Shown here piece by piece: positions 174 to 59,379 of a stretch of 64,000 nucleotides of DNA (its first letter is position 1; every line of letters starts with the position of its first letter). The position numbers were made by a program, and so were the translations under genes. Below the pieces are notes generated by a model that made no database searches, was not told where the DNA came from, and saw nothing but the letters and a program-made list of their open reading frames with translations. Source of the stretch: Azolla caroliniana (taxonomy: Eukaryota; Plantae; Polypodiophyta). The stretch covers positions 17,732,001 to 17,796,000 of the forward strand of contig JBHGNT010000002.1 of assembly GCA_043228905.1 (NCBI GenBank). Reading direction: 5' to 3'.

Positions 174-3100
174 TGTGGAAGATAAAAAAAACAACAAAAG
201 CATAGTACACAATGTTCTACGTCGAAACCCTAAACGGGAGAAACCACGGGAGCCTACAATGGATATACAAGATGACGAGATTACAACACTCTCTCCTCTC
301 TGTGTGTAACAGCCTCACAGGGCTCTTAACTTCTAAGCTCACTCAGCTATGGTGTAGTTCCCTCTCGCTCTCACTCATGCTCCCTCTTCTCTGTCAGACA
401 CTCCAATTGAGGTTGACAACTATTCTATTCTACCCACTCTATGTTTGCCCTAAGTGTATTTGTACTTATCCATTGTATGAGTTATTTACAAATGTAGCCA
501 CTGCTATTGTCATTCCTATTATAACAATAATATTTAATTAGTTGGTTGGTCGACTAGTCGACTATAGTGTCAACTGTCCAGTCAGTCCAATTAGTCGGCC
601 TTACCTTCGACCATCTGGTCGGCCCGACTAGTTGGTCGTGTCTTCGACTTGGAGTCTCCTACTGTTGACTCCCCCAGTTGACTCACCATGTCTTCCATTC
701 TCCGCATTCAACCCAATTAGTCGATTGCTCCCATACGAGGGACATATTCCTAACAAAGTCCCCCTTCACTCTTATGGGTGGAGTCGGTCAGTCCTGTCCT
801 CTGTCGACAGACTCTGAGTCTATCCATCGGTATGTTTTCTGTCAGCATGTTGGAGCCATTGTAGTTAGTATGGATCTTCACAAGTGTAAACTCTTCTTCT
901 TCCACTTTCTCCCACAACCAATGATACCTTCGTTGTATGTGCTTGGTTTGGGAGTGGTACACATCATCTTTGCTAGATGTATGGCACTCTAGCTCTCACA
1001 ATGAAGCAAGAACTCCCTTTCCTTCATCCCCAATTCGCTAAGAAAGTTTCTCCTCTAGATTAGCTCTTTTGCTGGCCTCTACCGCTGCCATGTACTCTGC
1101 CTCTATGGTCGACAAGGCCACCGACTTCTGCAGTCGTGACGGCCACGACACTGCTCCCCTTGCATAAGTCATCACGTACCCTGAAGTGGTTCGACTTGAG
1201 TCTGCATCCCCCGACATGTCTGAGTCAGTAAACCCTTCGAGCATGGGTTTTTCGACACCATACCTAAGGCACACACCCGAGGTTCCTTTTAAGTACCTAA
1301 GTATCCATTTCACTGCTACCTAGTGTTCTCTACTTGGATTACTCATATATCAGCTCCACAACAAATGCTATGTCTAGTCTCGTACAAACTATAGCATACA
1401 TTAAATTGCCGACGGTTGAGCCATCCGGTACTTTCTTCATCTCAACCTTTTGTTTCTCCCCTCTCGGGCATTGCTTCGCACTCAGCTTGCAATTGATCAG
1501 AAACATAGAGCCGACTGGCCTTAACTCCAACATGTTGAATCTTTCTAGGATCGTCGTCACATATTTCTCTTGTGAAAACCACAACACCTTCTTAGTTGCA
1601 TCTCCAACTATATGCATCCCTACGATATGCTTAGCTTGTCCAAGATCTTTCATGCCAAAGGACTTGCTTAGTGCTTTCTTCAAGCTCGTGATCATCTTTG
1701 TGTCTTGTTTGACTATCCACATGTCATCCACATAACATAAGAGAATCAAGAAATCACCTTCTTCATACCTTTTGACGAACACATAGTGATCAACCTGTGC
1801 TTTTTGGAACCAATGTTCCATCATGAAGGATTCCAACTTCTTGTACCCTTGGCATGGAGCTTGTTTCAACCCATACAAACTTTTCTTCCGTCGACACACC
1901 GAGTTCTCCTTCCCTTTCTCCACAAAGCCTTAGGGCAGTTGCGTGTATATCTCTTCATCTAGCTCCCCGTGCAAGAATATTGTCTTGACATCCAACTAGT
2001 AGCTATGCACGAAACAATTCGAATTGATGTCATCTTCACGACTAGTGCGAATATTTCATCCAAGTCAACACCCTTTTTCTATTGGAATCCCTTCACCAGA
2101 ATGTAATCTGGCTGTGTTGTCGACTTCTCAAGTCTTCACCTTGTAGACCCATTTATTTTTTAGTGCTCTTTTACCTTTTCGTAGTTCGACCAAGTCATAG
2201 GTGTAGTTCTCATGCAAGGAGTGTCCATTTCATACTGCATTGCGCTCAACCAATTCTCCTTGCGCTCATTAGCTATGGCTTCTTCATAGCAATCTGGTTC
2301 ACCTTCATTAGTTAAGAGGATTTATTTACTACCATATGTTGTCGTACTTTCCTTTCTTTGAGTGGGTATCTTCTTCCACTTGTTCTTCTTCCACTTGTTA
2401 TCGGCTCCAGTTCGGATGTCTCTACCGACTCTATACTTGGCTCGGATTCATATGTGTCAATCTGTCATTGGGGTTTACACGATTCAGACTCGTGGTCCTC
2501 GATCAACTTCAATAGGATTGCCCATTCCGACTCATCTGCATTTGTCGGTTGCTCCAAGTCCATCGACTCGGATTTAGCTGTGCCAATTGGTTGTCTTCGA
2601 ACAGCCGACTGTGTCGGTTCACTTGGCCTTAGGTCAATAGTAGTAGGAGTTGATTGGGAAGTTGATTCAGACTTCTGTTGCTTCTAGTCCTCTATTGTCA
2701 TGTCTTCCAAAAAGACTACATCTCGACTCCTCACAACCTTTAGCCGAAATCATCTTCCGAGTATCCCATGAATATGCAAGGTTTCAACTTACTATCGAGC
2801 TTTGACCGCAAATCCTTAGCCGCATGCATATACACTAAGCATCCAAACCCCTTCAGGTGTCAATAGGAGACATCCTTTCTTGTCCACACCCTTTGTGGGT
2901 GTCATGATATGGCAAGACTCGAACCCATGACCTTATGCTACATGGGTCGAACTCTTGACGATTACACCATACATTGTAATGGCAGAGACTCGAACCCATG
3001 ACCTTATGCTACATGGGTCAAGCTCTTGACCATTACACCATACATTGTAATACGTAGAATATTATTTTCATTTATGTTTTATTATAGAAAATTGATGTAT

Positions 3101-4200
3101 TTTCCAGATTTCTCTAGAACATTCTAGAAACTTCAGGAGTATTCCTGAGAACACTATAAAAGGAGGCACAAGGCATTATTTCGAACCAAATCGGTTCAAC
3201 GCCAGTCTTATGCCTCCTAGCTATTACTGTACATTCTCTTTACATAATATATATCTTTTCTTATCATCACTCTCTCTCTCTCTCTCTCTCTCCGTCCCTC
3301 TAACTCACTCTTTCCTTCTCTCGAGAGTTCTTCAACTCTCTTAGTACTAATACTTCTTTTAGTACTAATTCCTTCTCTGTCTTAGTACTGTTCCTGATAG
3401 TGGGACATCACCCTTCAATGGTACTAAGGGGGACCTATTGATCAGGTAGATGGTTGTATACATTGCCTACTCACAAATGAACAAAATTGGCTCTGCACTT
3501 GTAGCTACAACCGATGTGCCCTTTTCATCAAGAGTCTTCCGATGTGCACTTTTGTCCTTCTTGAGGTGTCGGCAGTCCTTCTGAAAGTGTCCAGGCTTTC
3601 CACAATAAAAGCATTTTAGCTTACCTCTGGACTTGGATTTGGCATGGGACTTTTCTCTCCTTGGTGGACTCCTTTCTCGGAATGTTGAGTCAAGTTTGAC
3701 TCCGACTTGGGCAGGACACCCTTCTCCTTCTTTCTAGTCTCCTCTTGTTCAAGATGATTGTCTTTACCACTTGTAGAGACAAGTTCTCTTCCTAACAAGA
3801 GGTCCTGAGAGTCACCACTAGATTCTCCCAATTGTCCGACATGATAGCAAGATGATCTGCATTGCATCTTCAAGGGGAAACTTCGTTGCCACAAGTTTGT
3901 TCACATACCCCATGAATGTGATGACGTGTTCAACTATGCTTTCCGCATCCCTATATTTCAACCTCACAATCTTTCTCATCAAAGATGTTTTGTTGAGAGC
4001 GTGCTTCCTCTCATATAAGCTTGAAAGCTTCTACAACATCTCGTACGCATTTGTGTCGTTCGCCACATGTTGGAGGACACTTACATCGAGACACTACCCC
4101 GATGGTGGCCACCATCTTTCTGTTAAGAAGTTTCCATTCTGACTCTAATACCCTCATGGGTATTTCTGCTCTATCGATTGGCTTGTACAGGTCTTTGCTC
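174..4200 (-). mobile_element. Decayed Ty1/copia element A (3' LTR 174-755, PPT 756-771, RT/RNase H, partial integrase, gag; 5' end missing)
   Basis: ORFs carry KKSLYGLKQAP, YVDD, GFTDSD and ALSTIEAEY. The PPT GAGTGAAGGGGGACTT abuts TGTTAGG. There are many stops. An internal deletion near 3480 joins integrase to the gag zinc knuckle, so no protease is seen. Confidence 0.9.
2900..3399 (+). mobile_element. Solo LTR (500 bp) inserted in copia A integrase; carries a duplicated tRNA-like module
   Basis: Starts TGTCATG. It is flanked by the 5-bp TSD GTGGG (2895-2899, 3400-3404), and removing it restores the copia INRSPLVPLKGD.PQRVWT region. TATA at 3155. A ~70-bp tandem duplication lies at 2909-3048. 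Confidence 0.85.
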
Positions 4201-4290
4201 TAGTACTAAGATAGAGAGGGAATTAGTACTAGAGATGAGGATTAGTATTATCAGGAAAGGAGTGTGTGGAACTCATGAGAGAAGGACACG

Positions 4291-4322
<32 letters not shown>

Positions 4323-4662
4323 TGATAACAAACAATATATTATAGGAAGAGAGGATAAACACGTTCGCGTTCACAAGTGGAAGGATCGCACATTCCACTT
4401 GTAGATTCCTTTTGTAATTATCCAAATATACCCTCTCTACAAAAATTCGATGCACTAGTATCACAAGTTCAACTTTGGAAGAATTTGGAAAATTCTTCGG
4501 AAGTATCACATGTTCAACTTGATTAGAATTTGAAAATCAATAAAACATGATAGGTCTCCGAGTGCAGAACATGTGAAATTCACTCAACTTTGGAATTGTT
4601 GATATGTTAATGCGATTAGAATAAAGTTCAACAATAGCTCAATAACACACTTTTGTGAGACA
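4201..4662 (-). mobile_element. Truncated LTR-like fragment related to the 2900-3399 solo LTR
   Basis: 4201-4230 resembles the reverse complement of 3361-3390. It contains (CA)n/(GA)n tracts and a possible TG terminus at 4662. Boundaries are uncertain. Confidence 0.4.
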
Positions 4663-6710
4663 TGGCAAACACTCAGATGAAGACTTATATTTGTTTGGTA
4701 AGTCTACCAAAAATATGAGGTGTAATTGTATCCATGTTACTAAAAGGAGTTATAATTAAGAGTTTGACTCATACTCGTATCTATATAATTGTTCTTAATG
4801 CAAGATAGTGAACCTTAGGATAATGTGATTGCAATAACAAAGCTATTAAAGCTTTCAATACTTGTGTTTAAAGTTTATGCAATCTAATCCTTAGGTGATT
4901 CTCATGGGATTGAACACCGAAAGATAACACTAGTTAAACTACAAGCGTATGAAACATGTAGATATTGATGAAAGGTGTTACTCCAAGGTTGTGCAACTAA
5001 TGGGACAATGTAACATCGGCCATTATCAACACACTACCCAAAGTAAGCAGCAATGGAAGACAAACGAACATAATAGTTTGATAATTATGAACACACTACC
5101 CATTCTAAGCAGCAATAGAAGACAAAGAACCATAATATATGGACAATTATATGCACGAAATTAGGCTTAAGGTTAAGTCAATCATGTTTCTCCATATTAG
5201 AGTCAACACTATATGCGTGAAATCACACTTAAGGTTAAGTAAGGTTCCCTTACACAATAATTGAATAACATTCATATAGCTTTAACTTTCCGAAGTCATA
5301 AGTCAACAAACGAAGTGTATAGGAATATAACTGAAACATATAGAACAATGTAAACAATGGACTACACGAATGGAAGAACCCGAACTTTATATTAGAAATT
5401 GGAATTCATAAGTTTAAACTTCATAAAAAAAACATTCTAGATTACATTGAAATCAAATCATTAACGTCATTATTGTCATCTTCCCTTCGAGAAGTCTCAG
5501 GAGCTATTTGTGCATTGTCTTCCCATATTAGCTGAGCAACCGTGAGATCTTTTGTAAGCTCGTCATCAAGCTCAATTAGCTCCCTCAGTTCCCTAGCTAC
5601 CGAAGGAATATGCTCTCGGGAAGCCAGTTGAAACCGTTCCGTATCAGCGATGTGCTTTGGACCGACCTCCTCGTCGTGGTCTGGGCATTCCCACAAGTCC
5701 TTAATCCTCATATTTATAAATGTAACTTGCTCCTCCTCCTTCTCCAATGCTACAATATTTCTAAAGAGCTTCAAAGCGCATGCAGACGTTGTACCTGCAA
5801 AGAAATGGGCAAGAAGACTTAGTTATCCAACCATAAGAATCAGTGTCGATTATATTTGTGCCAAAAAATACTTGTGCCGGAAAATAGGTGTAATATCCAA
5901 TCTCCTTCGTTCAAGAACATGTCAATCAAGCACATCATAAGTCGTTGAAGTTTTTGGTATGTGTTGACAAGTTCCTATTCTATTGTGGTGACATGTCACA
6001 ATTTGCATGTGTCTGCTGGATATTCCAACAGGTTTGAACCTCCAACTTCATTAGAGTACTCCTTGATTCTTTGTTCCTTTATTTTGTCGAAGTAACCAAC
6101 CGTAATGTACTCAATCGCATTTACCAACCGAAAGGTCGGTCCTTAATTCACGTTAGTTTTTATCCTATAATGAATAGTAGGTGAGTTAAGAATAGATTCG
6201 ATAAATTAAGAACGAAAGTATGGTGAATGAGACTTATAAATAATCCTTACGACACAAGGTTATCGATGTCGTGGCAACGAGATCTCAACGCTTGAGCTAC
6301 CGAGTACCATTGGTCCATGCTATGAAACACAACTATCCTCCACAAGGATGTAGTTGTCAACTAAGCAAAATCTTCATTTTTTCTAATTGTTTGAAACTGA
6401 AAGGTTCATCGTCGTATGATGATCCAACCATTAAAAGTCCATAAGGTATATCTGCAATCAAAAGTGTATAGTCTTTCTTTGGCACTTTCTAGATCATCTC
6501 TACAACATCGCCATAGATCACACTATAATAGAGATATTTTGTAATTTCTCTCTTGTGGCTAAATTTTTTGAAGGAGCCATCTTCTTCAATTTTATATGCC
6601 TTGACTAAGGGAGGATCTTTTTCTTTTTTGGCTCTCTCGAGATGTGCAAGGAAGGATGTTGGAAAGTCGTGTATATCCTTGACTTCTCTTGGTTTCTTGC
6701 CACGACAAGG

Positions 6711-8777
6711 TGTCACGACACAACGAATTTGTTAAATACGTAGTTAGTGAGGATTGAACCTGCAACCTCACAGCTACAAGATGTCATGCTCAACCATTTT
6801 GATATGAGCATGGATTTGTATATAATGGTTTAGTATTCTATAGTCTAGCATATAATACATTTCAGAATCAAAATATTCTAGTCAGTAGTATATTCTAGAA
6901 ATATTGTACGGCATATTCTAAACGAGTATATTCTAGAGATATTCAATCTCGGAACATGTATAAATACTTGTAACCTCCTTGGTCCCTTTCAAGGGATTCA
7001 ACACTAGTCATTGACCCATCAATACAATATTCTCGTTTTGACTCATCTTGTATCCTTGATCATTATTGTTGTCTTCATGCTCCGTTGGTGTGTCCATGAC
7101 ATTTTGAATCCCTTCCACCTAGAAACATTACCCGTCTTCGTCATCACCCTTGCTTCTAGAGTTACCATCGTCACCGTCATTGGTTCTAGAGTTACCATCA
7201 TCAACATCCCTTCGTTTTCTATCTTCCTCGCCATCTCTATCTTGTAGTTTGTTCTCAACACCTTCTTTGTCTTTTAGATTCTTCTCATCCTACACATCTC
7301 TATCTCCCAGTTTATTTTCATCATCATCTCTATCTCTACGCTTCTTATCATCTTCCACATCCCTATCTTTGCAATTTTTGTGATTGTCATCCTTTTCCTT
7401 GTGTTTCCTACCGTTTTCATCTCTATGTATATGTTTCTTATTAGCTTCGTCCCTTTCCTTGCGTTTCCTATCACCTTCATCCATGGCTTTGTGTTTTCTA
7501 CCATCCTCTATATCTGTGTCTTTGTATTTCTTCAGAACCTCAATGTCTTGATCTCTATGTTTCTTATCTTCTTCATCTCTTTCTTCGCTTCCATCATTGC
7601 CATAGTCAAAGTCGTTGCTTCCAAAGTCGCTTCGAAAACATCATAGCCTTCTTTGCTTTGTCTTCGACATCATCATCTTCAACCCTCTTGTTGTCGTCAT
7701 CAACACTACTTTTCCTAGCCATCATTGTCGTCAAGTCTTCCAGTTCCCGGTGAGGATCGTGCAGGTCTCTCAAGCTCACGTCCTTTCGTGTTCCAGTTCT
7801 CGATAAGCGCGACATGGTCGCTCACATCCATTCATGTTCCAGTTCTCGGTGAGGACCGCATGGTCACTCATGTCTGTTCGTGTTCCGGTTCTCGGTGACG
7901 GCCGCATGGTCACTCACTTTCGTTCGTGTTTCAGTTCTTAGTGACAGACACATGGTCGCTCATGCTCTTTCATGTTTTTGATGAGGACCGCACATCGTTC
8001 ACGTTCCAACTCCTGATGAGGACCACACATGGTCACTCACGTCCGTTTGTGTTCCAGTTCTTGGTGTGGGCCGCATGGTCACTCACACTCGTTCGTGTTC
8101 AGTTCTCGGTGAGGGTCGCATGGTCGTTTCGTGTTCCAGTTCTCGGTGAGGGCAGCATGGTCGCTCACGCCCGTTGGTGTTTGTTTTCCCTGTGAGGACT
8201 GCACATGGTCACTCACGCCCATTGGTATTCGTGTTCTAGTCTCCGGCGAGGACCGCACATGGTCACTCACTCCAGCTATTGTTCGTGTTTTGGATCCTGG
8301 CAAGGACCAACATAGTCACTCATGCCTGATGTTGTTCATGTTCCAATTCTTGTCCAGCCCTACACCACGCTTTCGAAAAGGCGGCTGTAAAGGGGAGGAT
8401 AATTTCACGACACAACGAATCTGTTAAATACGTATTTACTAAGGATTGAACCTGCAACCTCACAACTACAAGATGTCATGTTCAACCATTTGATATGAGC
8501 ATGCATTTGTATATAATAGTTTATATTTATTCTATAGTCTAGCATATAATACATTTCAGAATCAAAATATTCTAGAAATATTGTACGGCATATTCTAGAC
8601 GAGTATATTCTAGAGATATTCAATCTTGGAACATGTATAAGTACTTGTAACCTCCTTGGTTCCTTTCAAGGGATTCAACACTAGTCATTGAACCATCAAT
8701 ACAATATTCTCGTTTTGACTCATCTTGTGTCCTTGATCATTATCGTTGTCTCATGCTCCATTGGTGTGTCCATGACA
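6711..8777 (+). mobile_element. Non-autonomous LTR element (LTRs 6711-7101, 8403-8777) with self-priming-type PBS
   Basis: Two similar LTRs and TSD CAAGG (6706-6710, 8778-8782). PPT AAAGGGGAGGATAA precedes the 3' LTR. PBS TTGAATCCCTT at 7104-7114. No RT or integrase ORF. Confidence 0.92.
7745..8345 (+). repeat. Tandem array of ~46-54-bp hairpin-containing units inside the LTR element
   Basis: About 12 degenerate copies of GGTGAGGACCGCA(CA)TGGTC(G/A)CTCA...GTTCGTGTTCCAGTTCTC. Confidence 0.85.
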
Positions 8778-10779
8778 CAAGGTTTCTAATAGAGAAAATA
8801 AGGCATTGACTATTAATACACAACATATACATATTAAGAAATCATTATTACAAAGACGAATATTAACCCAATCCTTGAATGCAATGAAATACTCAGATAA
8901 CGCCTTATATGAAGACATCAAAGGATAATTCTCATTCACTTGTTCCCAAGTTATACATCCAAGTTTTTTCATCATAACATCTTGGATCTTCATATATACC
9001 TTATGACTGTGAAATCACCAATAGAGATAAGAACTTTATATAAAACTATAATTTCTTCATTTAACTACTTGACAAGACTTACTTGTTGAACTCAGTGACC
9101 ATCTCTTCTAGGCTCAATTCTATTGACACAGCCCTTGAAAACATTGACACCAATAGCTGCTCATCCTTTAAAATGCCTTGCATTGCTTTACACAGAGACA
9201 ACTTCATGTCGTTGGCTGCTTCTCCAAATGTCAGGTCGATTGTCTTCACCGCTTGTGATTTCAATTCAAGTTGGGGGTCTACTCTACCTTTTTTGCCGTT
9301 GACCCTTCACCTCCTTATTCTCCCACATTGAAAAAAATTGATCTTGACGGTCCTAGACATCCCTATCTCTAAAGGCTAGTTGAAACCATGACTCATACTT
9401 ATGAAGACCATCTGACTTAACATTATCGTCAACAACAATGCCGACCTTACGAGGACATTGAGGTCGTAGTCTGGGGTGAAGCTTTACATGGAACTTTTAT
9501 TTGACATCCAAGTACTCATGGTGGAAGAACCTTATCCGCTCGAGGGAACACATTTTTTGCCGATAGTCATTGTTGTGGTCCCATGCCAAGAGTTTTGCCT
9601 CTTCAGTTGTGAGGCCCACATATATTTTACACTCGGCATACTTGAAGAAAAAGGTGGTTGGGTGCTCTCTTACAAGTTGTCGTCGTGCTTCTGTGGAATG
9701 TGATCCACCAATTACAAAGTAATTGTATTGATCGTGCTTTCTCACATCAAAAAACTCAATTGCAGAACATTCATCAGGATCCACAATTACGATAAATGGT
9801 ACAACTATGGCATGTGGATTTATTTTCATTTTTATCTTGAGATTTTGAACATGCATTCTAAGTGGCTCTCTAATCTCAAGTGGTCTTTGTCTTGTATTAA
9901 CATCTACTAGTGGCCTATAAATGTGTGTTATTGGGAAATTGAAGACTTGACCTTTTCTCACCAATTTCTTTTGCGTTAACTCTCTTCGCATCTTGTTTGG
10001 CTTCGAAGAAAAAACACCAGATGCTAGATTAGCACCTGGAGTGGCCCGAGTTTCCTCATCATCTATTGAACTTGATGATTCGGACTCTGACATCTTTGTG
10101 ATATTTTTCGTTGTCGGTCTCGACTGCATCTTTGAGCCCTTTTGTGGGGCCTTCACCAGAGATGGTGACGCGTCCCTCAGAGTTATATGACCTTGTATAT
10201 ATGGTCTTAATGTTGTTATAAGATTTTGGGTGGAAGCACACTACGGTGTACCAGAAAAGTATTGTTTTTTGCCACAAAAATTGTCAGTACTTTCGATACT
10301 GTTAGTACTGAATAATTTAGAAAAAAAAAATTTGATTTTGGAGAGTGGGGTGACTGTAGTAGAAATGTCATTTACTACAAGGAGCGGGGGGAACATGTGA
10401 GGAGATGTTCTTTCCATTTTGGGGGCTATTTTCCCCTCATGTCGATTTTGGCGCTTCCCCTCATACTCCTCTTTCTCTATCCTCTAAGCTCTTCATCTCA
10501 GACATCCATGTCACGTTTCTGTTTTTCCTCCAATCTAACAGTTTTGTTAGGGTTTAGGGAGAAAATCTCAGACATCCATGTCAGGTTGGAGCTTTTGAGT
10601 TGAGGATTTCTGGTTTTTTTAGAGTTTCTGTTTTTGTTAGGGTTTAGGTTAAGGAACATAGACTGTTATGAGGCCTCTTATAACAGCCAATAGTGACTTC
10701 TTCGACAACGACTTTCTTACTTCCACCGATTGCAGTTTATGTCGTGGTGATTTGGGGCTTTTTCCATCGATGCGAGTAT

Positions 10780-11381: not shown

Positions 11382-14300
11382 ATGGGGGTCCCCAACGAGA
11401 GTGAGTTGTCAAGCAACTCGTGTATATCTGAAAGGACCAAGAGACGAGTGGTTCTTCACAGAGTCCGTTATTTGGTAGAAATAATGAAGAGATTTAGTGA
11501 AGAGGATCATAGGGATATTATATGTAGAGTGTTACACCATCAACATTTGAATGAAGACATGGAGAGAATAAAATTTAGGGACCAATGTGTTTCAGAAGAG
11601 ACTGTAGAGTCTATGAAGTCATCCCTAGACTTAGTGAAAGGTGTAGAGAGCATAGACAAACTTGCTGCAAAGAGGGCAGCCCTACACATGGTTGTGAACG
11701 GTGCGAGAGAAAAAAAATATAGTGATACTAAAGTTGCCTTAGCCCTGGGTATTCAAAGAAGGAACTCGAGGAAACATCGCCGAAATATACACTCAAGCCA
11801 ATTCAAGTGGCTGGGGTTGGGACGTAGACGACGATGTGATGCCTTATCTCAAGAGATTATTGAGAAAGTGGATTCATTTTGGGCCAAAAATACGTGTGTC
11901 TCACCAAATAAGAAGGACGTGTGTAGACAACGAATAAGTCAGGGTAAGTACCAGATTCACCCTAGACACTTCTTGGAGATGACAGAGGTATTCCATTTTT
12001 TTATATCAATTCACATTCCATAAATTTGTGTTTTGACCAAGTGTAAATTAATGTTTGCTATATATATTGGTTGATGTAGGCTGAATTGTACATGAACTTT
12101 AAAGACCAACATCCAAGCTTGACTGTTGGATTCTGCAAGTTCCAAGGTTTGAAACCATTTTATGTTAGAAAAGTAAATGAGAGGAATACATGTTGTTGTG
12201 TGTACCACGTGAAGATGGACATGTTAAGGCTAGGAGTGAATGTAATGCGTACTGATTCTAAGGGTATACACGGGGAATTATGTGTCTGCACTTGTGAGGT
12301 TTGTAAACCAAATGGGGAGGATAATAGGTGTAATGCACGAAACATGACTTATGCATCCGTTTCTGAGCTATGGAGGTATTGTGTTTGTGAAAAAGAACCA
12401 TCATGTGAGTGGCATCGTTGTACATGTCTATTAAGAACATGTAAGATTTGTCCGCTACCATTATTTTGCAGGCAGGAGCATGATTTGGGAAACAGTCATA
12501 TCGTGAAATGGAAATATTTAGAGTATGTGACTGCAAATATTGGCAAGGGACTTGTAAATAAGCATATCAAGGAAGTATATAAGGAGACATGTGCTGCTAC
12601 CCTTGTCTCAGAATTTAAGAAACAACTTGGGGAGTTCATTCCACATAACTTCCGGAGTTATTGGCAAAATTCACAGTTCAAGGAATGTATTAATAACTTA
12701 CCAACGGGTGTCATCGTATCCGTTATTGACTTTGTAGAAAACTATACATTTAAAGTTCAAAATGAGGTTCAATCAATGCATTGGTACAATGATCAATGTA
12801 CAATAATTGTACATAAGAAATCAATATTTTACATTTCGGATGATAAAAAGCATGGTACACTATTTGTTCAACATTGTTTTAAGCTTCACCATGTAGATTT
12901 ATTGTCTCTAGGGTTAACCTTTAACCGTCATTGGGTTTGGTCTGATGGTGTTGCCTCGCAGTTTAAGGCGGCACGATCGTTCTACTTTATCGCCAGGTAA
13001 TTTTTAATCCATATGTTTAGTACTTATCATGCAATGTGTAAGGAAGTAATTCTTGTGTTAGTGCATGCATACTGATTATGTTTGTAACTATTCACACACA
13101 GTACTATTCACATGGATGCATACTAATTATGTTTGTAACTATTCGAACACAACACTATTCACATGGATGCATGCATACTAATTTTGTTTGTAACTAAGTT
13201 AACTGTTCTTGATTGATCAAATAGTACTATCCTGTCACGTGAATCTGTCTTTATTATCTTTTAATCCATGTGAAGTGTTCTCCATAGACAAAGTGTACTA
13301 TGTTGTGTGTTGTATCTTTACTAAATCAGTATTTACTGAAGAATGTAAAGTACTCGTATTGTACTCTATAGTATTGTCCGTCCTCAAAAGAATTGTACTA
13401 ATTAGCTTTAATCCATGTGAAGTGTTCTCCATAGACACATTGTACTATGTTGTGTGTTGTATCTATACTAAATCAGTATTTACAAAAGGATCTAAAGTAC
13501 TCGTCTTGTACTCATAGTATTGTCCGTCCTTAAGAGAATTGTACCAATTATCTTTTAATCCATGTGAAGTGTTCTCCATAGACACATTGTACTATGTTGT
13601 GTGTTGTATCTGTACTATGTTGTGTTTACAGAAGGATGTAAAGTACTCGTCTTGTACTCATAGTATTGTCCATCCTTAAGAGAATTGTATTTATTATCTT
13701 TTAATCCATGTGAAGTGTTCTCCATAGACACATTGTACTATGTTGTATGTTGTATCTGTACTAAATCAGTATTTACTGAAGGATGTAAAGTACTCGTCTT
13801 GTACTCATAGTATTGTCCGTCCTTAAGAGAATTGTACTAATCATCTTTTAAATCATGTGAAGTGTTCTCCATAGACACATTGTACTATGTTGTGTGTTGT
13901 ATCTGTACTAAATCAGTATTTACTCATCTTGTACTCATAGTATTGACCGTCCTTCAGAGAATTGTACTAATTATCTTTTAATCCAGGTTGAGGGTTTTCC
14001 ATGCACACTATATTGTACTATGTGTTGTATCTGTACTAAAGAAGTAATTATCGAAGGATGTAAAGTACATGTCTTTTACTCATAGTACTATCCTAGATTG
14101 AAGAGTTTGTACTAATTATCTATTAATCAATGTTGAGTGTTCTCCATGAACACACTGTATTGTACTTGGTGTTGTATCTATACTAAATCAGTAATTATCG
14201 GAAGATGTAAAGTAAATGTCTTGTACTCATAGTATTGTCTTATATTGAAGAGTTCGTACTACTTATCTATTAATCCATGCTAAGTGTTCTCCATGAACAC

Positions 14301-15055
14301 ACTGTATTGTACTATGTGTTGTATCTATACTAAATAAGTGTTTATTGGGGGATGTAAACTACATGTGTTGTAGTACTAATTATCTTCTAAGGAGGGTTGT
14401 GTTCTCCGTGGACACATTGTATTGTATTGTGTATTGTATCTGTACTAAATCAGTATTAATGAATGTAAAGTACTCGTCGTCAGCAACATAGTACTATTTG
14501 ATATTGAAGAGTTTGTACTATTTATCTGTTAATTCATGTAGAGTGCTTTCCATGAATTCATTGTACTATGCTTTGTGTTGTATCCATACTAAATTAGTAT
14601 TAATGGATGCCAAGTTCACATGGTTGACAACATAGTACTATTTATCTTTTAATAAGTGTAGAGTGTTCTCAATGGATACGTTGTGCTATGCTTTGTTTTG
14701 TATTTGTACTAAATCAGTATTAATGGATGTGTAGTACTCTCAATTGACAACATAGTACTAATTTTGTTGGAAACGTGAGATACAAAATCAGGTATTTCTC
14801 CTTATTCAACATTCGTATGCAATGGAACTACTTCAGGTCTAGACATGGAAAAGGAGACCATGATGGTGCGGGGGCTATGATCAAACGTGCCCTTACAAGT
14901 GAGCAGTTGGATAATAATGGTGCTAAGTTACAAAATGCACATGATGTTCTGTAGTGGCTAACATGGAAGATGTCAAATGATGGTAAGAACAGATTGTTTG
15001 TTGAAGTTCACGTTGATGAGGTTGATAGAACTAAATCATATGGTTGTAAAACCAT
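11382..15055 (+). mobile_element. Spliced DNA transposase, Sola2-like (exons 11382-11987, 12080-12996, 14792-15055), truncated by an LTR insertion
   Basis: Cys-rich region (TCCCVYH, C..C), then IDFVENYTFKVQNEVQSMHW, WSDGVASQFK and WNYF...HGKGDHDGAGAMIKR. Both introns are GT-AG and phase-consistent. There is one stop in exon 3. The superfamily is assigned from recalled motifs, not from a search. Confidence 0.8.
13220..14760. repeat. ~147-bp tandem satellite (~11 copies) filling transposase intron 2
   Basis: Units start at about 13261, 13408, 13555, 13701, 13848, 13978, 14123, 14270, 14387, 14529 and 14649 (TTAATCCATGTGAAGTGTTCTCCATAGACACATTGTACT...). Divergence increases toward the 3' end. 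Confidence 0.95.
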
Positions 15056-24350: not shown

Positions 24351-27300
24351 GGACACGTGATCTATGAGACTAACCCACGCCTTTTACGACTATGCTTTTG
24401 GAATTGCAATGGATACCCATGGAATGCGGGATTTGGCATAGAGGAGTTCACCGATGACTCGGATATCACACTTCTTGTTGAGACATGGGAGCATGATACT
24501 CAAATACTCAAAGGATTCAAGGTTTAGGAAACTATAATGTACACTCTTTGATATGGAAGAAAAATCCAAGACAAAGAAGAGGACAAGGAGGGGTGGCATG
24601 TTTGATTAAGAAGGAAATAGAGAAATATGTGTCAATCATAAAAAATGATGAAAATAAATGCTACATATGGCTCAAAATAGAAACACCTAATGATTTGCCC
24701 ACTTTTGTAGTTGGATGTTACATCCCTCATCAAGATTCTAACTTTTATGCTTGTTTGGATAAAGATCAACCGTTTGCCAATCTAGAAGATGATATTGCTT
24801 ATTTCAAATCCAAAGGGGAAGTTATTGTCTTTGGTGACATGAATGCTCGTACAAGAAGTTTCCAACTTGATTCACAAGAATCTTTCATGCCACATATCTC
24901 AAGGATGCAAGAGGATATGCAAATGTATAACCGCTCTTCTAGCGATGAAAAAGATCCGGACCAATTTGGGAAGTTACTCCTACAAATGTGCAATAGTACC
25001 GGATTGCTTATTGCAAATGGTATTTCCTTATGGCCCAGCACTAATGGTTTTACATGTAGAAAACACAATGGAAATAGTGTGATTGACTATGTGCTACTTT
25101 CCGAATGTATTTTGGATCGTATACATAAATTCTCACTTGGTGAATGGACACCGGAATCCGATCATAGGCCTTTATGTATCGATCTCAAATGTATGCATAG
25201 GTTTGATTGTGAGAAGGCTATTGAAGATAATAAACAACCGCACTTGAGCATGAACCTTAAGCGAGCACCCATGTATTCCAAGATAGTTGAGGATATGTTA
25301 CAAATGACAAAGATACAACATGGTGCCACACTAGAATGCAAATGGGAAGCTTTCAAGAAAGTCATTCTCTCATGTACAAACAAATGTTTTTCGACCAATC
25401 GCACATCTTGGAAATGCACCAAGAAACTTAGGAAAAAATGGTTTGATAAAGAATGTCATGAAGCTCGAAAGTGCCTTATGGTTTTGGATGTAGTTAAGGA
25501 TAAAGAGAATTACCAAAATCATTTGCATGAGTATAAAAGGCTTATTCAAAGAAAGAGAAGAATATGGGAAGTTACTCAACAACTTATCCAAACGCAAGAG
25601 AAAGCACATGCATGTGCTAAATTTTGGGGAAATCTAAAGGGAAAACGTGTTGAGAGTTATGGTGACTTAACTCTTCACGACTTGTCTATGCATTGTAAGA
25701 ATTTATATGAGTTATCTCTTGCCGGAAAGATGATGTGTTATGGTTCTCTTTCACATATGCCTCCCTTCTTTACAATTGAAGATATATGCATAGGACTTAA
25801 GAAATTGGCCTCTCGAAAGGCAAGCGATCTTCAATGTATAAAGGCTGAAATGCTCAAATGGACGGGAAAGGAAGCACATATATGGATAAGCGATATGTTT
25901 AATGATGCATTGCAACATGGAATGCCGTACGATTGGACTACAAATTGGATCAAACCTTTACATAAAGGTGGAGATATAAATAATGTAAACAACTATCGAA
26001 CCATCATGGTTGGCTCATTAATGGCAAAACTATTTGGATGTATAATGGAATCAAAGATAAGTGTATGGGCTGAAAAAAGTGGTAAGAGAGCTTATGGACA
26101 AGCTGGCTTTCGGAAACACCATAGCACCATTGATCACCTTATCACCCTTCGAGTATTAACGGAGGAAAGTCGCCTTAGAGGTAAAGGTTTATATTGTTGC
26201 TTTGTAGACTTCAAGAAAGCTTTTGATATGGTACCTCGTGAGCATCTTTGGAGGCGAATGGAAGAACTTGAGGTGCCAAGTGAATATATGCTTGCAATTT
26301 CCCGAATTTATGAGAAGGTTATATGTTGTGTGCGCATGAGAGATAAACTTTCAGATTTTTTCAAAAGCACTATTGGTGTTAAGCAAGGATGCCCACTCTC
26401 ACCAACACTATTTGGTCTATGCATTGATGAATTGGAAGAAATGGTTACCAAGTTTGCAAAGGAAGAATGTGTTGAAGAAGTTGCCATTGGGAATGTTGTG
26501 ATTATGCTTTTGCTATATGCAGATGATGTAGTGCTTTTTGCAAATACTTTAGGAGATGCACAAAAGCTTATGAAGGCATTGGAAAAATTTTGCATGCATA
26601 CTAAATTAAGTGTCAATAGCTCTAAAACAAAGATTATGCTTGTGAAGAGCCAAAAAAGAGATAAACCATGCATTATGTACAACAATGAGCCACTTGAATG
26701 TGTGGAAAGCTTCAAATATCTTGGCCTTGAAGTTCCTTCAAATCATAGATGGAATGAATGTGCTACACGCCGCTTAGAGGCGGGCAAGCGAGCATACTAT
26801 GCATTTGAGAACACATGCAATCTTGGAGATATTAAGTGTTGGGTCCTCAAGAAATATCTTTTCGACACTTTGGTGACACCGGTTCTTCTCTATGGGGTGG
26901 AAGTATGGGGCGGTAGCATCCCTAAATCTATGTGGAAAGAGTTTGAAAATGTCCAAAAGCATTTTCTTACCAAGTTTCTACAAGTTAAGAAACAAACGCC
27001 CTACACCCTCCTCCTCCTTGAGACGGGATCGCTTCCCATTGAGATCATGGCCATGGAAAGGGTTGTTGAATACATGCTTAAGGTTCAAAAAAGTCCCTCA
27101 CATCGACTTCCTAGAATTGCGTGGGAAGCAAGCAAAAAGATCCAAAAGACGCATAAAAGCAAAATTTTGTGTTCCGGTTGGATGCAAGATATAGAAAAAT
27201 GGTTTGGTAGATGGGATGCGAGACACTTGCTTCATGATGCATCATTAGATTCCTCTGTAAATGAGGCATTTTTGCAACGCCAATGTATCATGACATGGGA

Positions 27301-27739
27301 CAAATGTGGAGGCTCACGCTTCACACATTATACTACACATGTTGCACCTAACTACAAAACCATATTCTTCGCGGAACGGGGAAATCGTACACATCCATAC
27401 ATGTTAGAGCCCATACCGTTATCTTCCATTCGAACCATTGCTTCCATGCGACTTAGCTCACATGCATTGCGATGTGAAACAGGGCGTTGGGGTACAAGTG
27501 ATGAGAGTGGTCGGTTATGCGCACTTTGCCCTAAACAAGTTCGCGAGTCTGAGTATCACACTTTGATACAATGCTCTGCCTTTGATCATATTCGACCATG
27601 CTTTACACATCTCTTCGATCGAGCCCAATCTTTGCATGAATTCCTCTCACAACCACAATGTGCACTCTCGATTGCAACATTCATTGGTAAAGTTCTTGAA
27701 CATCGAGAGTCACTACTCACTTTCACACATATCACGTGA
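24351..27739 (+). CDS. LINE ORF2 (AP endonuclease, reverse transcriptase, CCHC); one 8-bp frameshift near the 5' end
   Basis: LCFWNCNG and DITLLVETW (24351 frame), then GDMNAR, SVIDY, SDH, QAGFR, FVDFKKAFD, GVKQGCPLSP, LYADD and C..C...H...C. The duplication ATACTCAA-ATACTCAA near 24496-24511 shifts the frame. Confidence 0.92.
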
Positions 27740-28077
27740 AATGTAATATTTTTGGTCTCATAGGTCATATTTGACCTCCGAAGACGATAATATAATCTAT
27801 CTATCTATCTCTCTATACAACAGTTATATCTCTACAACAATATGGCAACCCTCTCTACACATACAAAGTGATTTCCCTAAGTTATATTTATACTTATATG
27901 AACTTAGGGCTATTTACAAATATAGCCTCAATAGGCTTACTCAAAAGACATACTTACAAATATGTCTTCTCTTCCGGTTCTCACCGGGTCTCCTCCAGTT
28001 TCTGGATCTCTTCCGGTTCTCACCAGGTCCTCTTCATTCATAACCGGATCCCATCCGGAGGGACCGATTTCGTAACA

Positions 28078-30606: not shown

Positions 30607-30922
30607 GTTGGGAATGAAGCAAAGGGAGTTCTTGCTTCATTGCGGCAGCCAGAGCGCCATACATCTAGCCAAAAATGTTGCATACCACTCCCAGACCAAA
30701 CGTATATAGAGGAGGTATCACTGGTTGCGGGAGAAAGTGGAAGAAGGAGAGTTTACCCTTGTCAAGATCCATATTGATGACAATGGATCGGACATGTTGA
30801 TAAAGAACCTACTAATGGACAGACTCAGAGTCTGTCGACTGAAGATAGGACTAACTGACTCCACCCATAGGAGTGAAGGGGGAGTTTGTTCATAATATGT
30901 CCCTCCTATGGGAGGAGCTGAC

Positions 30923-33567
30923 TGTCACAGACATGACAACAGTCATGTCAAAATTTGAACTCTTGACCTCTTGACATATATAGTCAAGTGTTGTGTTCTA
31001 ACCAACACATCCAAATATACGGTCATGTTATGCATATCTTAGTAGATTATTAGTACATTATCTATTTCAAGTTCTAAGACTTTTTAGAAAGTTCTAGAAC
31101 TAGAAGGTTCTAGAGGGTTCTAGAATTTTCTCCCGAATTTCTCCAAAATATTCTAATGCATATACTTTGACTCACAGTATAAATACTTGTAACCTCCTTT
31201 GTTCCTTTCAAGGGATTCAACACCAGTCATTGACACATCAATCTAGTATTCTTGTTTAGCACTATCTTCTCTTCTTGATTTACATCTCTGTCTTTATGCT
31301 CTTGAATTGTTCCTAGCGTCTTAAGTTCCTCATCTCATCGCTCCCAACTTCCCGAGTTTCTAGCCTCATCACATTGAGTTCCACGTTTGTAACCTTATCA
31401 ATCGTAGCCTTGTCATCTATGCTTTGTCGTAGTCTAGCATTGGTGTGTCCGTGACAATTTGAATCCCTTCCAACTGGAAGCATTACCCGTTTTCGTCATC
31501 GCCCTGCTTCTAGAGTTACCATTGTCACCGTCATTGGTTCTAGAGTTACCATCATCAACATCCCTTCATATTCTATCTTTCCTCGTCATCTTTATCTCTT
31601 AGTTTCTTCTCATCATCGTCATTGTCTTTTAGATTCTTCTCATCCTTCACATCTTTATCTCCTAGTTTCTTCTCATCATCATCTCTATCTCTGCACTTCT
31701 TATCATCTTCCACATCCCTATCTTAGCATTTTTTGTCATTGTTATCCTTCTCCTTGTGTTTCCTACCGTTTTCATCTCTATCTATGTGTTTCTTATTATC
31801 TTCGTCCTTTTCTCTGCGTTTCCTATCACCTTCATCCTTGTCTTTGTGTTTCCTCTTATCCTCTGTATTTTTGTATTTGTGTTTCTTCAGAACCTCAACA
31901 TCTCAATCTCTATGTTTCTTATCCTCTTCATCTCTTTCTCCACTTCCATCATTGCCATAGTCAAAGTCGTTGCTTCAAAAGTCGCTTCGTCAACATCATT
32001 GTCTTCATTGCTTCGTCTTCGACATCATCATCTTCAACACTCTTGTTGTCGTCATCAACACTACTTTGCCTAGCCTTCATTTTCGTCAAGTGTTCCAATT
32101 CCCGGTGAGGACCATGTAGGGTCGCTCACATCCGTTGGTGTTCGTGTCTCCGGTGAGGACCACACATGATCTCTCGCGCCCGTTGGTGTTCACGTCTCCG
32201 GTGAGAACCATACATGGTCTCTCATGCTCGTTGGTGTTCCAGTCCCCGATGAGGACCGTACATGGTCTCTCATACTCATTGGTGTTCCAATTCCCGATGA
32301 GGACCGCACATGGTCGCTCATTTCAGTTGGTGTTCGTGTCTCCGGTGAGGACCGCACATGGTCGCTCATTTCCGTTGGTGTTCGTGTCTCTGGTGAGGAC
32401 CGCACATGGTCGCTCATTTCCGTTGGTGTTCGTGTCTCTGGTGAGACCATACATGGTCTCTCACACCCTTGGTGTTCGTGTCTTTGTTGAGAACCGCACA
32501 TGGTTGCTCACGTCCATTGGTGTTCCAGTTTCTGATGAGAACCGCACATGGTTGCTCATGTCTGTTGGTGTTCGTGTCTCCGATGAGAACCGCACATGGT
32601 CGCTCACGTCCGTTGGTGTTCTAGTTCCCGGTGAGGACCGCACATGGTCACTCATATCCATTGGTGTTCCTGTCTCCGGTGAGGACCCCACATGGTCACT
32701 CACGTTGGTGTTCAGTCTCCAGTGAGGACCGTACATGGTCGCTCACGCCCGTTGGTGTTCCAGTTCCCGGTGAGGATCGTACATTGTCGCTCACACTCAC
32801 GTTGGTGTTCTAGTCTCCAGTCAGGACCGAACATGGTTGCTCATGCTCACATTGGTGTTACAGTCTCCGGTGAGGACTCTACATGGTCGCTCATGCTCGT
32901 TGGTGTTCCAATCTCTGGTGAGGACCACACATGGCCCTATTTCTGGTGAGGACTGCTCATGGTCACTCACTCCTCAACGTACTTTGGTTTTCTCTTTCAA
33001 CTCACCCCTACACCACGCTTTGGAAAAGGTGGCCATAAAGGGGAGGATAGTGTCAAGACAAATATGACAATAGTCATGTCAAGATTTGAACTCTTAACCT
33101 TTTGACATATATAATCAAGTATTGTGTTATAACCAATACATCCAAATATATGGTCATGTTATATATATCTTAGTAGATTATTAGTAGATTATCTATTTCA
33201 AGTTCTAGGACTTTTTAGAAAGTTTTAGAACTAGAAAGTTCTAGAATATTCTCCAAAATATTCTAATGCATGTACTTTGACTCACAGTATAAATACTTGT
33301 AACCTCCTAGGTTCCTTTCGAAGGACTCAACACCAGTCATTGACACATCAATCTAGTATTCTTGTTTAGCCCCATCTTCTCTCCTTAGATTTACATCTCT
33401 GTCTTTATGCTCTTGTATTGTTCCTAGCGTCTTAAGTTCCTCATCTCATCGCTCCCAAATTCCCGTGTTTCTAGCCTCATCACGTCGAGTTCCACGTTTG
33501 TAACCTTATCTGTCGTAGCCTTGTCATCTGTGCTTTGTTTTAGGCTAGCATTGGTGTGTTCGTGACA
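30923..33567 (+). mobile_element. Non-autonomous LTR element (LTRs 30923-31456, 33051-33567) with self-priming-type PBS; relative of 6711-8777
   Basis: TG...CA LTRs, TSD CTGAC/CCGAC, PPT AAAGGGGAGGATAG and PBS TTGAATCCCTT (31459-31469). The interior is homologous to 7102-8402. Confidence 0.92.
32100..32972 (+). repeat. Tandem array of ~48-bp hairpin units (~18 copies)
   Basis: The unit CCGGTGAGGACCGCACATGGTCGCTCATTTCCGTTGGTGTTCGTGTCT repeats with period 48 (e.g. 32104, 32152, 32344, 32392). Confidence 0.92.
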
Positions 33568-46239: not shown

Positions 46240-46291
<52 letters not shown>

Positions 46292-50201: not shown

Positions 50202-50237
<36 letters not shown>

Positions 50238-58955: not shown

Positions 58956-59379
58956 AGGACTTATGACACATGGGAACACGTGGTGGATTAGGAGCTTTAA
59001 GTGATAGGCTATATAAAGGTATTGGCTACCCATTCATTGTAACATTTTTGAGACATTATTGATACTCTATTATTGGGGCTAAAATCTCTTAATTAGATTA
59101 GTTATTTAACTACCAAGGAATACATTAGGTAATATTCATTGGTATGGAAAATCGACATTGTTTTATATTTGTTTCATGTCCTCTTTTGAGGGGTAGTCAG
59201 TGTAGCTAATTTCATCATTGGTATGATTTGTAACATTTGGTATTTGAGCCAATTACCAATGTTTTTTTTCTTTTACCTTGTGTTTTTCTAAAGTGATTAA
59301 TGAGAATTTTGGCCAATCCAAGAACAAAGAAGGCGAATTTTCAATAATCTTCTTAATTTTTCTCTTTTAATATTAAAAA

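What the first reader, a model, noticed from the sequence alone, without database searches (positions are those of the whole stretch)
6959..7114. Tf1-type self-priming signature: PBS is the exact 11-nt complement of the element's own predicted 5' end
Seen: no TGG tRNA PBS follows the 5' LTR. Instead TTGAATCCCTT (7104-7114) is the reverse complement of AAGGGATTCAA (6991-7001), which begins 32 nt after TATAAATA (6959). The second element has the same geometry (TATA 31178, 31210-31220, PBS 31459-31469), although its LTR is otherwise divergent. Established: S. pombe Tf1 primes reverse transcription with the first 11 nt of its own mRNA. Inference: these are non-autonomous parasites of a self-priming gypsy/chromovirus-type family.
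Basis: partly seen in the sequence, partly recalled or inferred. Interest (0 to 1): 0.8.

Follow-up and report, generated by a model that had tools for sequence, protein, structure and literature searches.

The report
Self-priming non-coding fern LTR retrotransposons
Two old, protein-less jumping genes in a fern genome carry, exactly where a tRNA primer site should be, an 11-letter sequence that pairs with the predicted start of their own RNA, so they most probably start their own reverse transcription as yeast Tf1 does; this mechanism has already been predicted for some plant element lineages.

Summary
TTGAATCCCTT (7104-7114; 31459-31469) is the exact reverse complement of AAGGGATTCAA (6991-7001; 31210-31220).

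- **Position.** The 11-mer starts 2 nt after the LTR's terminal CA, and TSDs fix that end. Its partner starts 32 nt after TATAAATA, at a C|A step.
- **Chance.** About 1-2 in 10,000 per element.
- **Recurrence.** The pair is perfect in 6 of 8 5'-LTR junctions (2 in the window, 6 in metagenome contigs).
- **Predicted fold.** The RNA forms an 11-bp duplex plus a second stem between R and the end of U5. That stem is 94% paired in 30 LTR copies, with two compensatory double changes.

Both elements (6711-8777; 30923-33567) are non-coding and old (LTR pairs 88-90% identical). They belong to a very high-copy family of a fern. Tf1-type self-priming is the best reading (about 0.75).

Not shown:
- the transcription start (no usable RNA reads);
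- covariation inside the 11-bp duplex;
- the autonomous partner.

The "gypsy/chromovirus" attribution is untested. The literature predicts self-priming for Tcn1 chromoviruses and also for Ty1/copia TAR. The three copia families checked here use tRNA-Met.

The scan has already noted the same kind of element on other DNA of this genome (s1-500930 and others). This is a new member of a known kind.

The parts
6706..6710 (+). Element 1, left target-site duplication CAAGG
   Evidence: Identical 5-mer at 8778-8782
6711..7101 (+). Element 1, 5' LTR (TGTCA...TGACA, 391 bp)
   Evidence: 90% identical to 8403-8777; bounded by the TSD
6959..6966 (+). Element 1, TATA box TATAAATA
   Evidence: Read directly; part of a 21-nt block found in 56 metagenome contigs
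6991..7001 (+). Element 1, predicted first 11 nt of the transcript (self-primer) AAGGGATTCAA
   Evidence: Exact complement of 7104-7114. Lies 32 nt after TATA and is preceded by C (a C|A initiator-like step). Column identity is 95.9% in 51 LTR copies.
7007..7023 (+). Element 1, R arm of the second stem (GTCATTGACCCATCAAT)
   Evidence: Pairs with 7084-7100 in the MFE and centroid folds. The stem is 94% paired in 30 LTR copies, with two compensatory double changes.
7084..7100 (+). Element 1, U5-end arm of the second stem
7104..7114 (+). Element 1, primer-binding site TTGAATCCCTT, 2 nt (TT) after the LTR's terminal CA
7115..8388 (+). Element 1, non-coding internal region with 46-48-bp tandem repeats
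   Evidence: Repeat families D4 and D11; ORFs have no Pfam domain; 80% identical to element 2's internal region
8389..8399 (+). Element 1, polypurine tract AAAGGGGAGGA (followed by TAA)
   Evidence: The same tract precedes the 3' LTR in 16 further copies in the contigs, at 4 or fewer mismatches over the 19-nt PPT-to-LTR-start probe
8403..8777 (+). Element 1, 3' LTR (start mutated to TTTCA); R-start motif at 8668-8678
8778..8782 (+). Element 1, right target-site duplication CAAGG
30923..31456 (+). Element 2, 5' LTR (534 bp), inserted in the LTR of a tRNA-Met-type copia
   Evidence: 88.5% identical to the 3' LTR. Flanks are collinear with the copia 3' end in L060. TSD is CTGAC/CCGAC.
31178..31185 (+). 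Element 2, TATA box
31210..31220 (+). Element 2, predicted self-primer AAGGGATTCAA
31459..31469 (+). Element 2, primer-binding site TTGAATCCCTT, 2 nt (AT) after the LTR end
33037..33047 (+). Element 2, polypurine tract AAAGGGGAGGA (followed by TAG)
33051..33567 (+). Element 2, 3' LTR; its R-start motif has decayed to GAAGGACTCAA
2900..3399 (+). Solo LTR of a related, about 10-fold more abundant LTR family, TSD GTGGG. The equivalent motif AATCGGTTCAA is at 3189-3199.
   Evidence: R region aligns with elements 1 and 2...TTCAACRCCAGTC; empty site and depth

Best explanation
Elements 1 (6711-8777) and 2 (30923-33567) are old copies of a high-copy, non-coding LTR retrotransposon family of a fern. 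They most probably prime minus-strand DNA synthesis with the 5' end of their own RNA.

Proposed steps (all inferred unless marked):
1. Pol II starts at the A of C|AAGGGATTCAA, 32 nt after the TATA box.
2. The RNA folds back. Nucleotides 1-11 pair with TTGAATCCCTT, which lies 2 nt past U5. A second stem (R nt 17-33 with the last 17-18 nt of U5) holds the panhandle together.
3. An RNase H supplied in trans cuts after nt 11 (...UUCAA|C), as in Tf1.
4. The 11-mer's 3'-OH is extended through U5 and R.
5. Reverse transcription then proceeds as usual, with AAAGGGGAGGA as plus-strand primer.

Shown here: the sequences, their exact positions relative to TSD-defined LTR ends, their recurrence, and the predicted fold with limited covariation.

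Inferred: the transcription start, the cleavage, the priming, and the existence of a partner that supplies Gag, RT/RNase H and integrase.
For: 1. The complement is exactly 11 nt in both elements. Chance is 1.3-2.2e-4 per element.
2. In reverse transcription the U5 end is set by where the primer anneals, less the nucleotides integrase trims after CA (established retroviral mechanism). The TSDs place the LTR end at ...TGACA. The primer must therefore abut 2 nt later, which is where TTGAA... begins. A primer must end in ...UUCAA-3', which no CCA-ended tRNA does.
3. The complementarity stops at a C|A step 32 nt after TATAAATA, the usual TATA-to-start distance.
4. In 56 contigs of the same or a related plant, 34 of 51 in-register LTRs carry AAGGGATTCAA. 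Mean column identity is 95.9% for the 11-mer and 92.8% for the second-stem arm, against 80% for the 5-nt loop between them and 84% downstream.
5. Eight 5'-LTR junctions all have the 2-nt spacer plus the PBS. Six pairs are perfect and two have decayed.
6. MFE and centroid folds of R-U5-PBS close the 11-bp duplex in elements 1 and 2, with z = -4.2 and -4.1. MFE folds close it in four of five further copies and partly in decayed L024. RNAalifold gives 29 consensus pairs.
7. The second stem is 94% paired in 30 LTR copies. It has two independent compensatory doubles: G-C to A-U in L034, and A-U to G-C in L024 and L055. Pairing within a copy exceeds shuffled pairings (14 of 2000 shuffles reach the observed count).
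8. The mechanism is proven for Tf1: the first 11 bases pair with the PBS and RNase H cuts between 11 and 12 (PMC7175516). It is predicted for 12% of surveyed plant elements (PMC6317226).
Against: - No transcription-start data. The only RNA-labelled run is contigs with almost no coverage, and no starts are reported.
- No covariation inside the 11-bp duplex. Every informative junction has the same pair, and the two decayed copies are not compensated.
- Both arms lie in generally conserved blocks, and the copies were ascertained with a neighbouring 21-nt pattern. Conservation could therefore reflect promoter or packaging function.
- Copies are related, so the shuffle control overstates independence.
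- No autonomous element with this PBS was found.
- The window copies are old (LTR pairs 88-90% identical), so activity is historical.
Confidence: 0.75

Rival explanations
1. The mechanism is self-priming, but the partner is a Ty1/copia element of the TAR lineage (or another copia), not a gypsy/chromovirus.
For: Neumann et al. 2019 (PMC6317226) predict self-priming for 89% of 203 TAR copia elements. They place Tcn1 only in mosses and club-mosses. Novikova et al. 2010 (PMC2864245) did not detect Tcn1 in 26 ferns and horsetails by PCR. The 5-bp TSD fits both superfamilies.
Against: The three copia families whose 5' ends I could read (Cop-C in the window, the Cop-A family via L006, the copia in L009) all have TGGTATCAGAGC-type tRNA-Met sites and TGTT... 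LTR starts, unlike TGTCA... here. First-stage notes on this genome mention self-priming in Tcn1-like chromoviruses (s1-516898, s1-507633) and none in copia; these notes are unchecked. No TAR element was identified in any data I held.
Confidence: 0.3
2. The inverted repeat is a structural signal only (5' panhandle for packaging, dimerisation or strand transfer). Priming would then use some other RNA ending in ...UUCAA-3', for example a processed host RNA or a tRNA fragment.
For: The extended second stem with covariation shows that a structure is selected, not that its 5' strand is the primer. Retroviruses and Ty1 also use long-range 5' pairings (own knowledge). The plus-strand PBS resembles the sense strand of a tRNA T-arm by eye.
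Against: The duplex occupies exactly the primer position, so any other primer would have to compete with an intramolecular 11-bp helix. No tRNA can end in UUCAA. ARAGORN and Rfam find no tRNA-like gene in the window or loci. From memory, the anticodon arm of plant tRNA-Leu(CAA) does not match. The complementarity ends precisely at the predicted +1.
Confidence: 0.12
3. A conventional tRNA site lies further downstream: TGGAAGCATCACC, 18 nt after the LTR (31475 in element 2; TAG in element 1).
For: This block is fairly conserved among junctions and starts with TGG in 4 of 8. From memory it shares 8-9 of 13 positions with a tRNA-Gln 3'-end complement.
Against: A primer annealed there would make the LTR 18 nt longer, but the TSD-defined 3' LTRs end at ...TGACA. 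TGG is TAG in 4 of 8 copies, whereas the 11-mer is intact in 6 of 8. No contiguous match of 11 nt or more to any tRNA end I know.
Confidence: 0.03

Closest known systems
Tf1/Tf2 of Schizosaccharomyces pombe and the Tf1/sushi group (Maggy, Skippy, Cft-1, Tcn1, sushi)
   Same: No tRNA PBS. An 11-nt PBS next to the 5' LTR is complementary to the first 11 nt of the RNA. An additional RNA structure near U5 is present (PMC7175516, PMC6934838).
   Different: Those are autonomous Ty3/gypsy chromoviruses of fungi and vertebrates, with priming shown by experiment. Here there is no coding sequence, the host is a fern, and every mechanistic step is inferred.
Ty1/copia TAR lineage of seed plants (Houba, Osr-1)
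   Same: Plant LTR elements with 5-bp TSDs for which self-priming is predicted from sequence (89% of 203 elements; PMC6317226).
   Different: These are autonomous elements of about 6.3 kb. Lineage membership rests on RT, RNase H and integrase phylogeny, which cannot be applied to a non-coding element. No TAR element was seen in my data.
Tcn1 clade of plant chromoviruses (mosses, Selaginella)
   Same: Non-seed-plant elements with predicted self-priming (83% of 1500; PMC6317226).
   Different: Reported only from mosses and club-mosses, and not detected in ferns by PCR (PMC2864245). They carry a chromodomain integrase, and nothing comparable is present here.
LARD/TRIM-type non-autonomous LTR retrotransposons (own knowledge: Dasheng, Sukkula, Cassandra)
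   Same: LTRs, TSD, PBS and PPT are retained, the internal region is non-coding, copy number is high, and mobilisation is presumably in trans.
   Different: The described plant examples have tRNA-type PBSs. At 2.1-2.6 kb with 391-534-bp LTRs, these lie between TRIM and LARD in size.

Membership tests
Self-priming LTR retrotransposons (mechanistic class defined by Tf1) | No tRNA-complementary PBS next to the 5' LTR | tested here: met
   TTGAATCCCTT follows the terminal CA by 2 nt, with no TGG; 8 of 8 junctions
Self-priming LTR retrotransposons (mechanistic class defined by Tf1) | PBS complementary to the first ~11 nt of the element's own transcript | tested here: inconclusive
   The exact 11-nt complement is shown. 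That it is the RNA 5' end is inferred only from TATA +32 and a C|A step. No start data were available.
Self-priming LTR retrotransposons (mechanistic class defined by Tf1) | RNA structure that brings the 5' end onto the PBS | tested here: met
   Predicted folds with z about -4. RNAalifold gives 29 pairs. The second stem is 94% paired with 2 compensatory doubles. This is prediction, not probing.
Self-priming LTR retrotransposons (mechanistic class defined by Tf1) | RNase H cleavage after nt 11 and extension of the 11-mer | not testable with these tools
   Needs cDNA or primer analysis
Tf1/sushi or Tcn1 chromovirus clade | RT/RNase H/integrase phylogeny and a chromodomain | not testable with these tools
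   The elements encode no protein domain, and no partner was found
Ty1/copia TAR lineage | Copia domain order and placement of RT, RNase H and integrase in the TAR clade | not testable with these tools
   No coding sequence. The copia elements nearby are tRNA-Met primed.
Non-autonomous LTR retrotransposon (LARD/TRIM-like) | Two LTRs, TSD, PBS and PPT, with no gag/pol | tested here: met
TRIM in the strict sense | Total length under about 1 kb with LTRs of 100-250 bp (own knowledge) | tested here: not met
   2067 and 2645 bp in total; LTRs are 391 and 534 bp

The most novel reading that the evidence does not exclude
The partner is a Tf1/sushi-Tcn1-type chromovirus living in a fern, a group in which that clade has been reported absent. 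The non-coding family, the about 10-fold more abundant solo-LTR family and their partner would then form a guild of self-priming elements. Its members share a conserved ...UUCAA|C cleavage context, a 5' panhandle and heat-shock-element promoters. This would extend self-priming, and perhaps heat-inducible mobilisation, to ferns.
Probability: 0.3. Interest if true: 0.55.

Novelty: new member of a known kind. Interest (0 to 1): 0.4.

Why it matters
Self-priming has been shown by experiment only in fission yeast. In plants it is a sequence-based prediction for two lineages, and neither is documented in ferns in the papers I could read. This family is non-coding, very abundant and simple. The primer, the PBS, a supporting stem and the PPT are nearly all that is conserved, which makes it a compact substrate for testing the mechanism in a plant. 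It also matters for annotation, because LTR finders that require a tRNA PBS will miss or mis-bound such families in fern genomes. The gain is incremental: the kind is known, and the scan has already met it elsewhere in this genome.

Tried and rejected
- **Transcription-start mapping.** The look-up of sequencing runs found no RNA holder, and all runs are contigs. Read laying gave no starts. An RNA-labelled run has contigs over 7083-7765, but these are uninformative for the start.
TTGAACCGATT or TTGAACCAATT next to an LTR end occurs nowhere in the window or the 61 loci.
- **Variant R starts.** Copies with AGGGGATTCAA or AAAGGATTCAA are all solo or 3' LTRs with no junction.
- **The copia at 790-4197 (minus strand) as a possible partner: rejected.** It is 5'-truncated. 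Its family has a decayed tRNA-Met site (L006). The LTR-like stretch at 4200-4470 is a second fragment of the solo-LTR family, not this copia's LTR.
- **L009: rejected.** It is an LTR fragment beside a tRNA-Met copia.
- **L051: rejected.** It is an insertion into a Tat-type gypsy (RT_RNaseH_2 plus RVT_3).
- **L001 and L016.** Solo LTRs near a P450 gene.
- **L023, L030, L050.** Truncated copies.
- **IMG/VR scan for LTR end plus PBS.** Three chance hits; the one I read (L058) has no LTR context.
- **tRNA-like module at the start of U3.** Seen by eye, but not supported by ARAGORN or Rfam.
- **Exact look-up of the PAL protein.** Not in the collection.
- **Accession search.** The ENA assembly accessions (ERZ10343xx) occur in no paper.
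- **Tf1 primary papers.** Not held.
- **Third protein search.** Left unused, because no chromovirus or TAR query sequence was available by reference.

Full report
**What is there**

The window holds two small LTR retrotransposons on the + strand.

| | Span | 5' LTR | 3' LTR | TSD |
|---|---|---|---|---|
| Element 1 | 6711-8777 | 6711-7101 | 8403-8777 | CAAGG on both sides |
| Element 2 | 30923-33567 | 30923-31456 | 33051-33567 | CTGAC / CCGAC |

- The LTR pairs are 90% and 88.5% identical, so both insertions are old.
- The LTRs begin TGTCA and end TGACA.
- Each 3' LTR is preceded by AAAGGGGAGGA plus three bases.
- The internal regions (1.3 and 1.6 kb) are 80% identical to each other.
- They consist largely of 46-48-bp tandem repeats, and no ORF matches Pfam.
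- Element 2 sits inside the LTR of a copia element. The flanks 30611-30916 and 33568 onward are collinear with the RNase H tail, PPT and LTR of the copia in contig L060.
- The solo LTR at 2900-3399 (TSD GTGGG) interrupts another copia. Its empty site appears as a 2894->3400 joint in contigs of three DNA runs.

**The observation**

- TTGAATCCCTT lies 2 nt after the last A of the 5' LTR in both elements.
- It is the exact reverse complement of AAGGGATTCAA, which begins 32 nt after TATAAATA.
- The match is exactly 11 nt. The base before the upstream arm is C, giving a C|A step of the kind found at Pol II starts.
- In 200,000 Markov shuffles of each LTR, a complement of 11 nt or more anchored within 6 nt of the LTR end arose with frequency 2.2e-4 and 1.3e-4.
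- A control copia in the window (5' LTR ending about 55126, minus strand) has TGGTATCAGAGC instead and no such complement.

**Why the position matters**

In retroviral-type reverse transcription, the end of U5 is set by where the minus-strand primer anneals. Integrase then trims the few bases after CA. This is established mechanism.

The TSDs place the LTR end at ...TGACA, so the primer's 3' end must pair with the base 2 nt further on. That is the first T of TTGAATCCCTT. Any primer must therefore end in ...UUCAA-3'.
- This excludes all CCA-ended tRNAs.
- It also excludes the conserved TGGAAGCATCACC block 18 nt downstream, which would make the LTR 18 nt longer than observed.

**More copies**

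One scan of metagenome contigs with the 21-nt promoter block returned 56 contigs from ENA assemblies ERZ10343xx.
- Contigs from these assemblies carry copia sequence 70-84% identical to the window's and plant genes such as P450 and PPR. They therefore hold DNA of this plant or a close relative.
- Of 51 LTRs in register, 34 carry AAGGGATTCAA. The others differ at 1-4 positions.
- Mean column identity by segment:

| Segment | Identity |
|---|---|
| 11-mer | 95.9% |
| 5-nt loop after it | 80% |
| Next 17 nt (second-stem arm) | 92.8% |
| Further downstream | 84% |

- Most of these LTRs are solo or 3' LTRs.
- Eight 5' junctions exist in all: elements 1 and 2, plus L002, L006, L023, L024, L030 and L050. 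All have a 2-nt spacer followed by the PBS. Six pairs are perfect and two have decayed without compensation.
- DNA contigs of three runs under two species labels show very high depth over the R region of this LTR, and about ten-fold more over the solo LTR.

**Structure**

- Folded as RNA from the predicted start to just past the PBS, elements 1 and 2 close the 11-bp duplex in both MFE and centroid. After a small internal loop they add a second stem between R nt 17-33 and the last 17-18 nt of U5. The z-scores are -4.2 and -4.1, and no shuffle does as well.
- Of five further copies, four do the same and the decayed L024 only in part.
- RNAalifold on seven sequences gives 29 consensus pairs.
- The second stem lies wholly inside the LTR, so it can be scored in any LTR copy. 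In 30 copies, 451 of 480 cells are standard pairs.
- Most changes are wobble-compatible.
- There are two independent double changes that keep a pair: G-C to A-U in L034, and A-U to G-C in L024 and L055.
- Pairing within a copy beats re-dealt partners. Only 14 of 2000 shuffles reach the observed count.
- The copies are related, so this is modest support, and it concerns the second stem, not the primer duplex itself.

**Interpretation**

Tf1 of fission yeast pairs the first 11 bases of its RNA with its PBS, and its RNase H cuts between bases 11 and 12 to make the primer (PMC7175516). The anatomy here matches that scheme point for point, including an auxiliary structure at U5.

I put Tf1-type self-priming at about 0.75. 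The remainder goes mainly to "a selected 5' panhandle, but another primer". What is missing:
- the transcription start;
- the cleavage;
- covariation inside the 11-bp duplex.

**The partner**

*Literature*
- Neumann et al. 2019 predict self-priming for 12% of plant elements. These are concentrated in Ty1/copia TAR (89% of 203) and Tcn1 chromoviruses (83% of 1500) (PMC6317226).
- They found Tcn1 only in mosses and club-mosses. A PCR survey did not find it in ferns (PMC2864245).

*Host.* The host is a fern. The intronless PAL gene at 36688-38886 (minus strand) is 80-81% identical to proteins of Ceratopteris and Adiantum, and 72% or less identical to any other named hit.

*Copia families checked.* All three have tRNA-Met sites and TGTT... 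LTR starts:
- Cop-C at 51868-56014;
- the family of the truncated copia at 790-4197, read through L006;
- the copia in L009.

*Other candidates.* The only gypsy fragment I met (L051, Tat-type with an extra RNase H) is simply an insertion target. Every 3' end preceded by the family's PPT is of the non-coding type.

*First-stage notes.* Notes on this genome mention self-priming in "Tcn1-like chromoviruses" and none in copia. They are unchecked leads.

*My odds.* Chromovirus about 0.45, TAR-like or other copia about 0.3, other or unknown the rest.

**The related solo LTR**

- Its R region aligns with that of elements 1 and 2 (TATA, about 33 nt, then ..GGTTCAACGCCAGTC against ..GATTCAACACYAGTC).
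- A second LTR of that family, in L024, has AATTGGTTCAA.
- The shared ...TTCAA|C fits a conserved cleavage context.

**Novelty**

- The kind is known and has been predicted in plants at scale.
- The scan has already reported non-coding self-priming LTR elements elsewhere in this genome (s1-500930, with matching changes in relatives; also s1-518990, s1-497370, s1-527362, s1-509375).
- I did not check those claims.
- New here are a well-delimited, very abundant fern family, the argument from the TSD-fixed LTR end, and the second stem with covariation.

Noticed in passing
window 3117-3134; 31087-31130; 33234-33251: Perfect trimeric heat-shock-element motifs (GAAnnTTCnnGAA) cluster in U3 about 50-90 nt upstream of the TATA box in the solo LTR and in both LTRs of element 2. 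The window has 9 matches against 0.98 expected, and 6 of them are in these LTRs. This suggests heat-inducible transcription, as in Arabidopsis ONSEN (own knowledge).
   Followed up: partly
window 2909-3051; 6745-6810; 30945-31015; L060 2668-2846: The start of U3 in these LTR families carries one or two units that by eye resemble the reverse complement of a tRNA (..TYGAACCCRTGACC..). ARAGORN and Rfam do not call them, even at E up to 1, so the resemblance is unconfirmed.
   Followed up: partly
window 4200-4470 (minus strand): A second fragment (R-U5) of the solo-LTR family abuts a 5'-truncated copia gag exactly at 4197/4198. It looks like that copia's 5' LTR but is unrelated to its 3' LTR at about 115-760.
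   Followed up: yes
window 7290-7640 (minus strand); L023 about 340-620 (minus strand): The internal region read antisense gives open frames for acidic or charged low-complexity peptides. Contigs of a run guessed to be RNA cover 7279-7595 at depth about 148. This may be a captured host transcript or an antisense ORF. No Pfam match.
   Followed up: partly
window 36688-38886 (minus strand): An intact, intronless phenylalanine ammonia-lyase gene (Lyase_aromatic, E 2e-144). The best named relatives are the ferns Ceratopteris richardii (81%) and Adiantum nelumboides (80%).
   Followed up: yes
window 24548-27739 (+): A LINE with an open 1063-aa ORF (endonuclease plus RVT_1).
   Followed up: no
window 51868-56014 (minus strand): A copia with LTRs, PBS TGGTATCAGAGC and internal deletions. 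Its 5' LTR carries an extra insertion. A related copy lies at about 28000-30250.
   Followed up: partly
window 46200-50587: A GC-rich element bounded by about 430-445-bp direct repeats (93% identical), nested in the integrase region of another copia (RT at 44757-46595, minus strand). Its ORFs have no Pfam match.
   Followed up: no
L033 about 2365-2810; L021 and L056: Rearranged copies. In L033, R (nt 1-35) is joined directly to the internal region, with U5 and the PBS missing. In L021 and L056, R is followed by an inverted LTR start.
   Followed up: no
window 13200-14760; 57907-59013: Tandem arrays with periods of about 147 bp and 275 bp.
   Followed up: no
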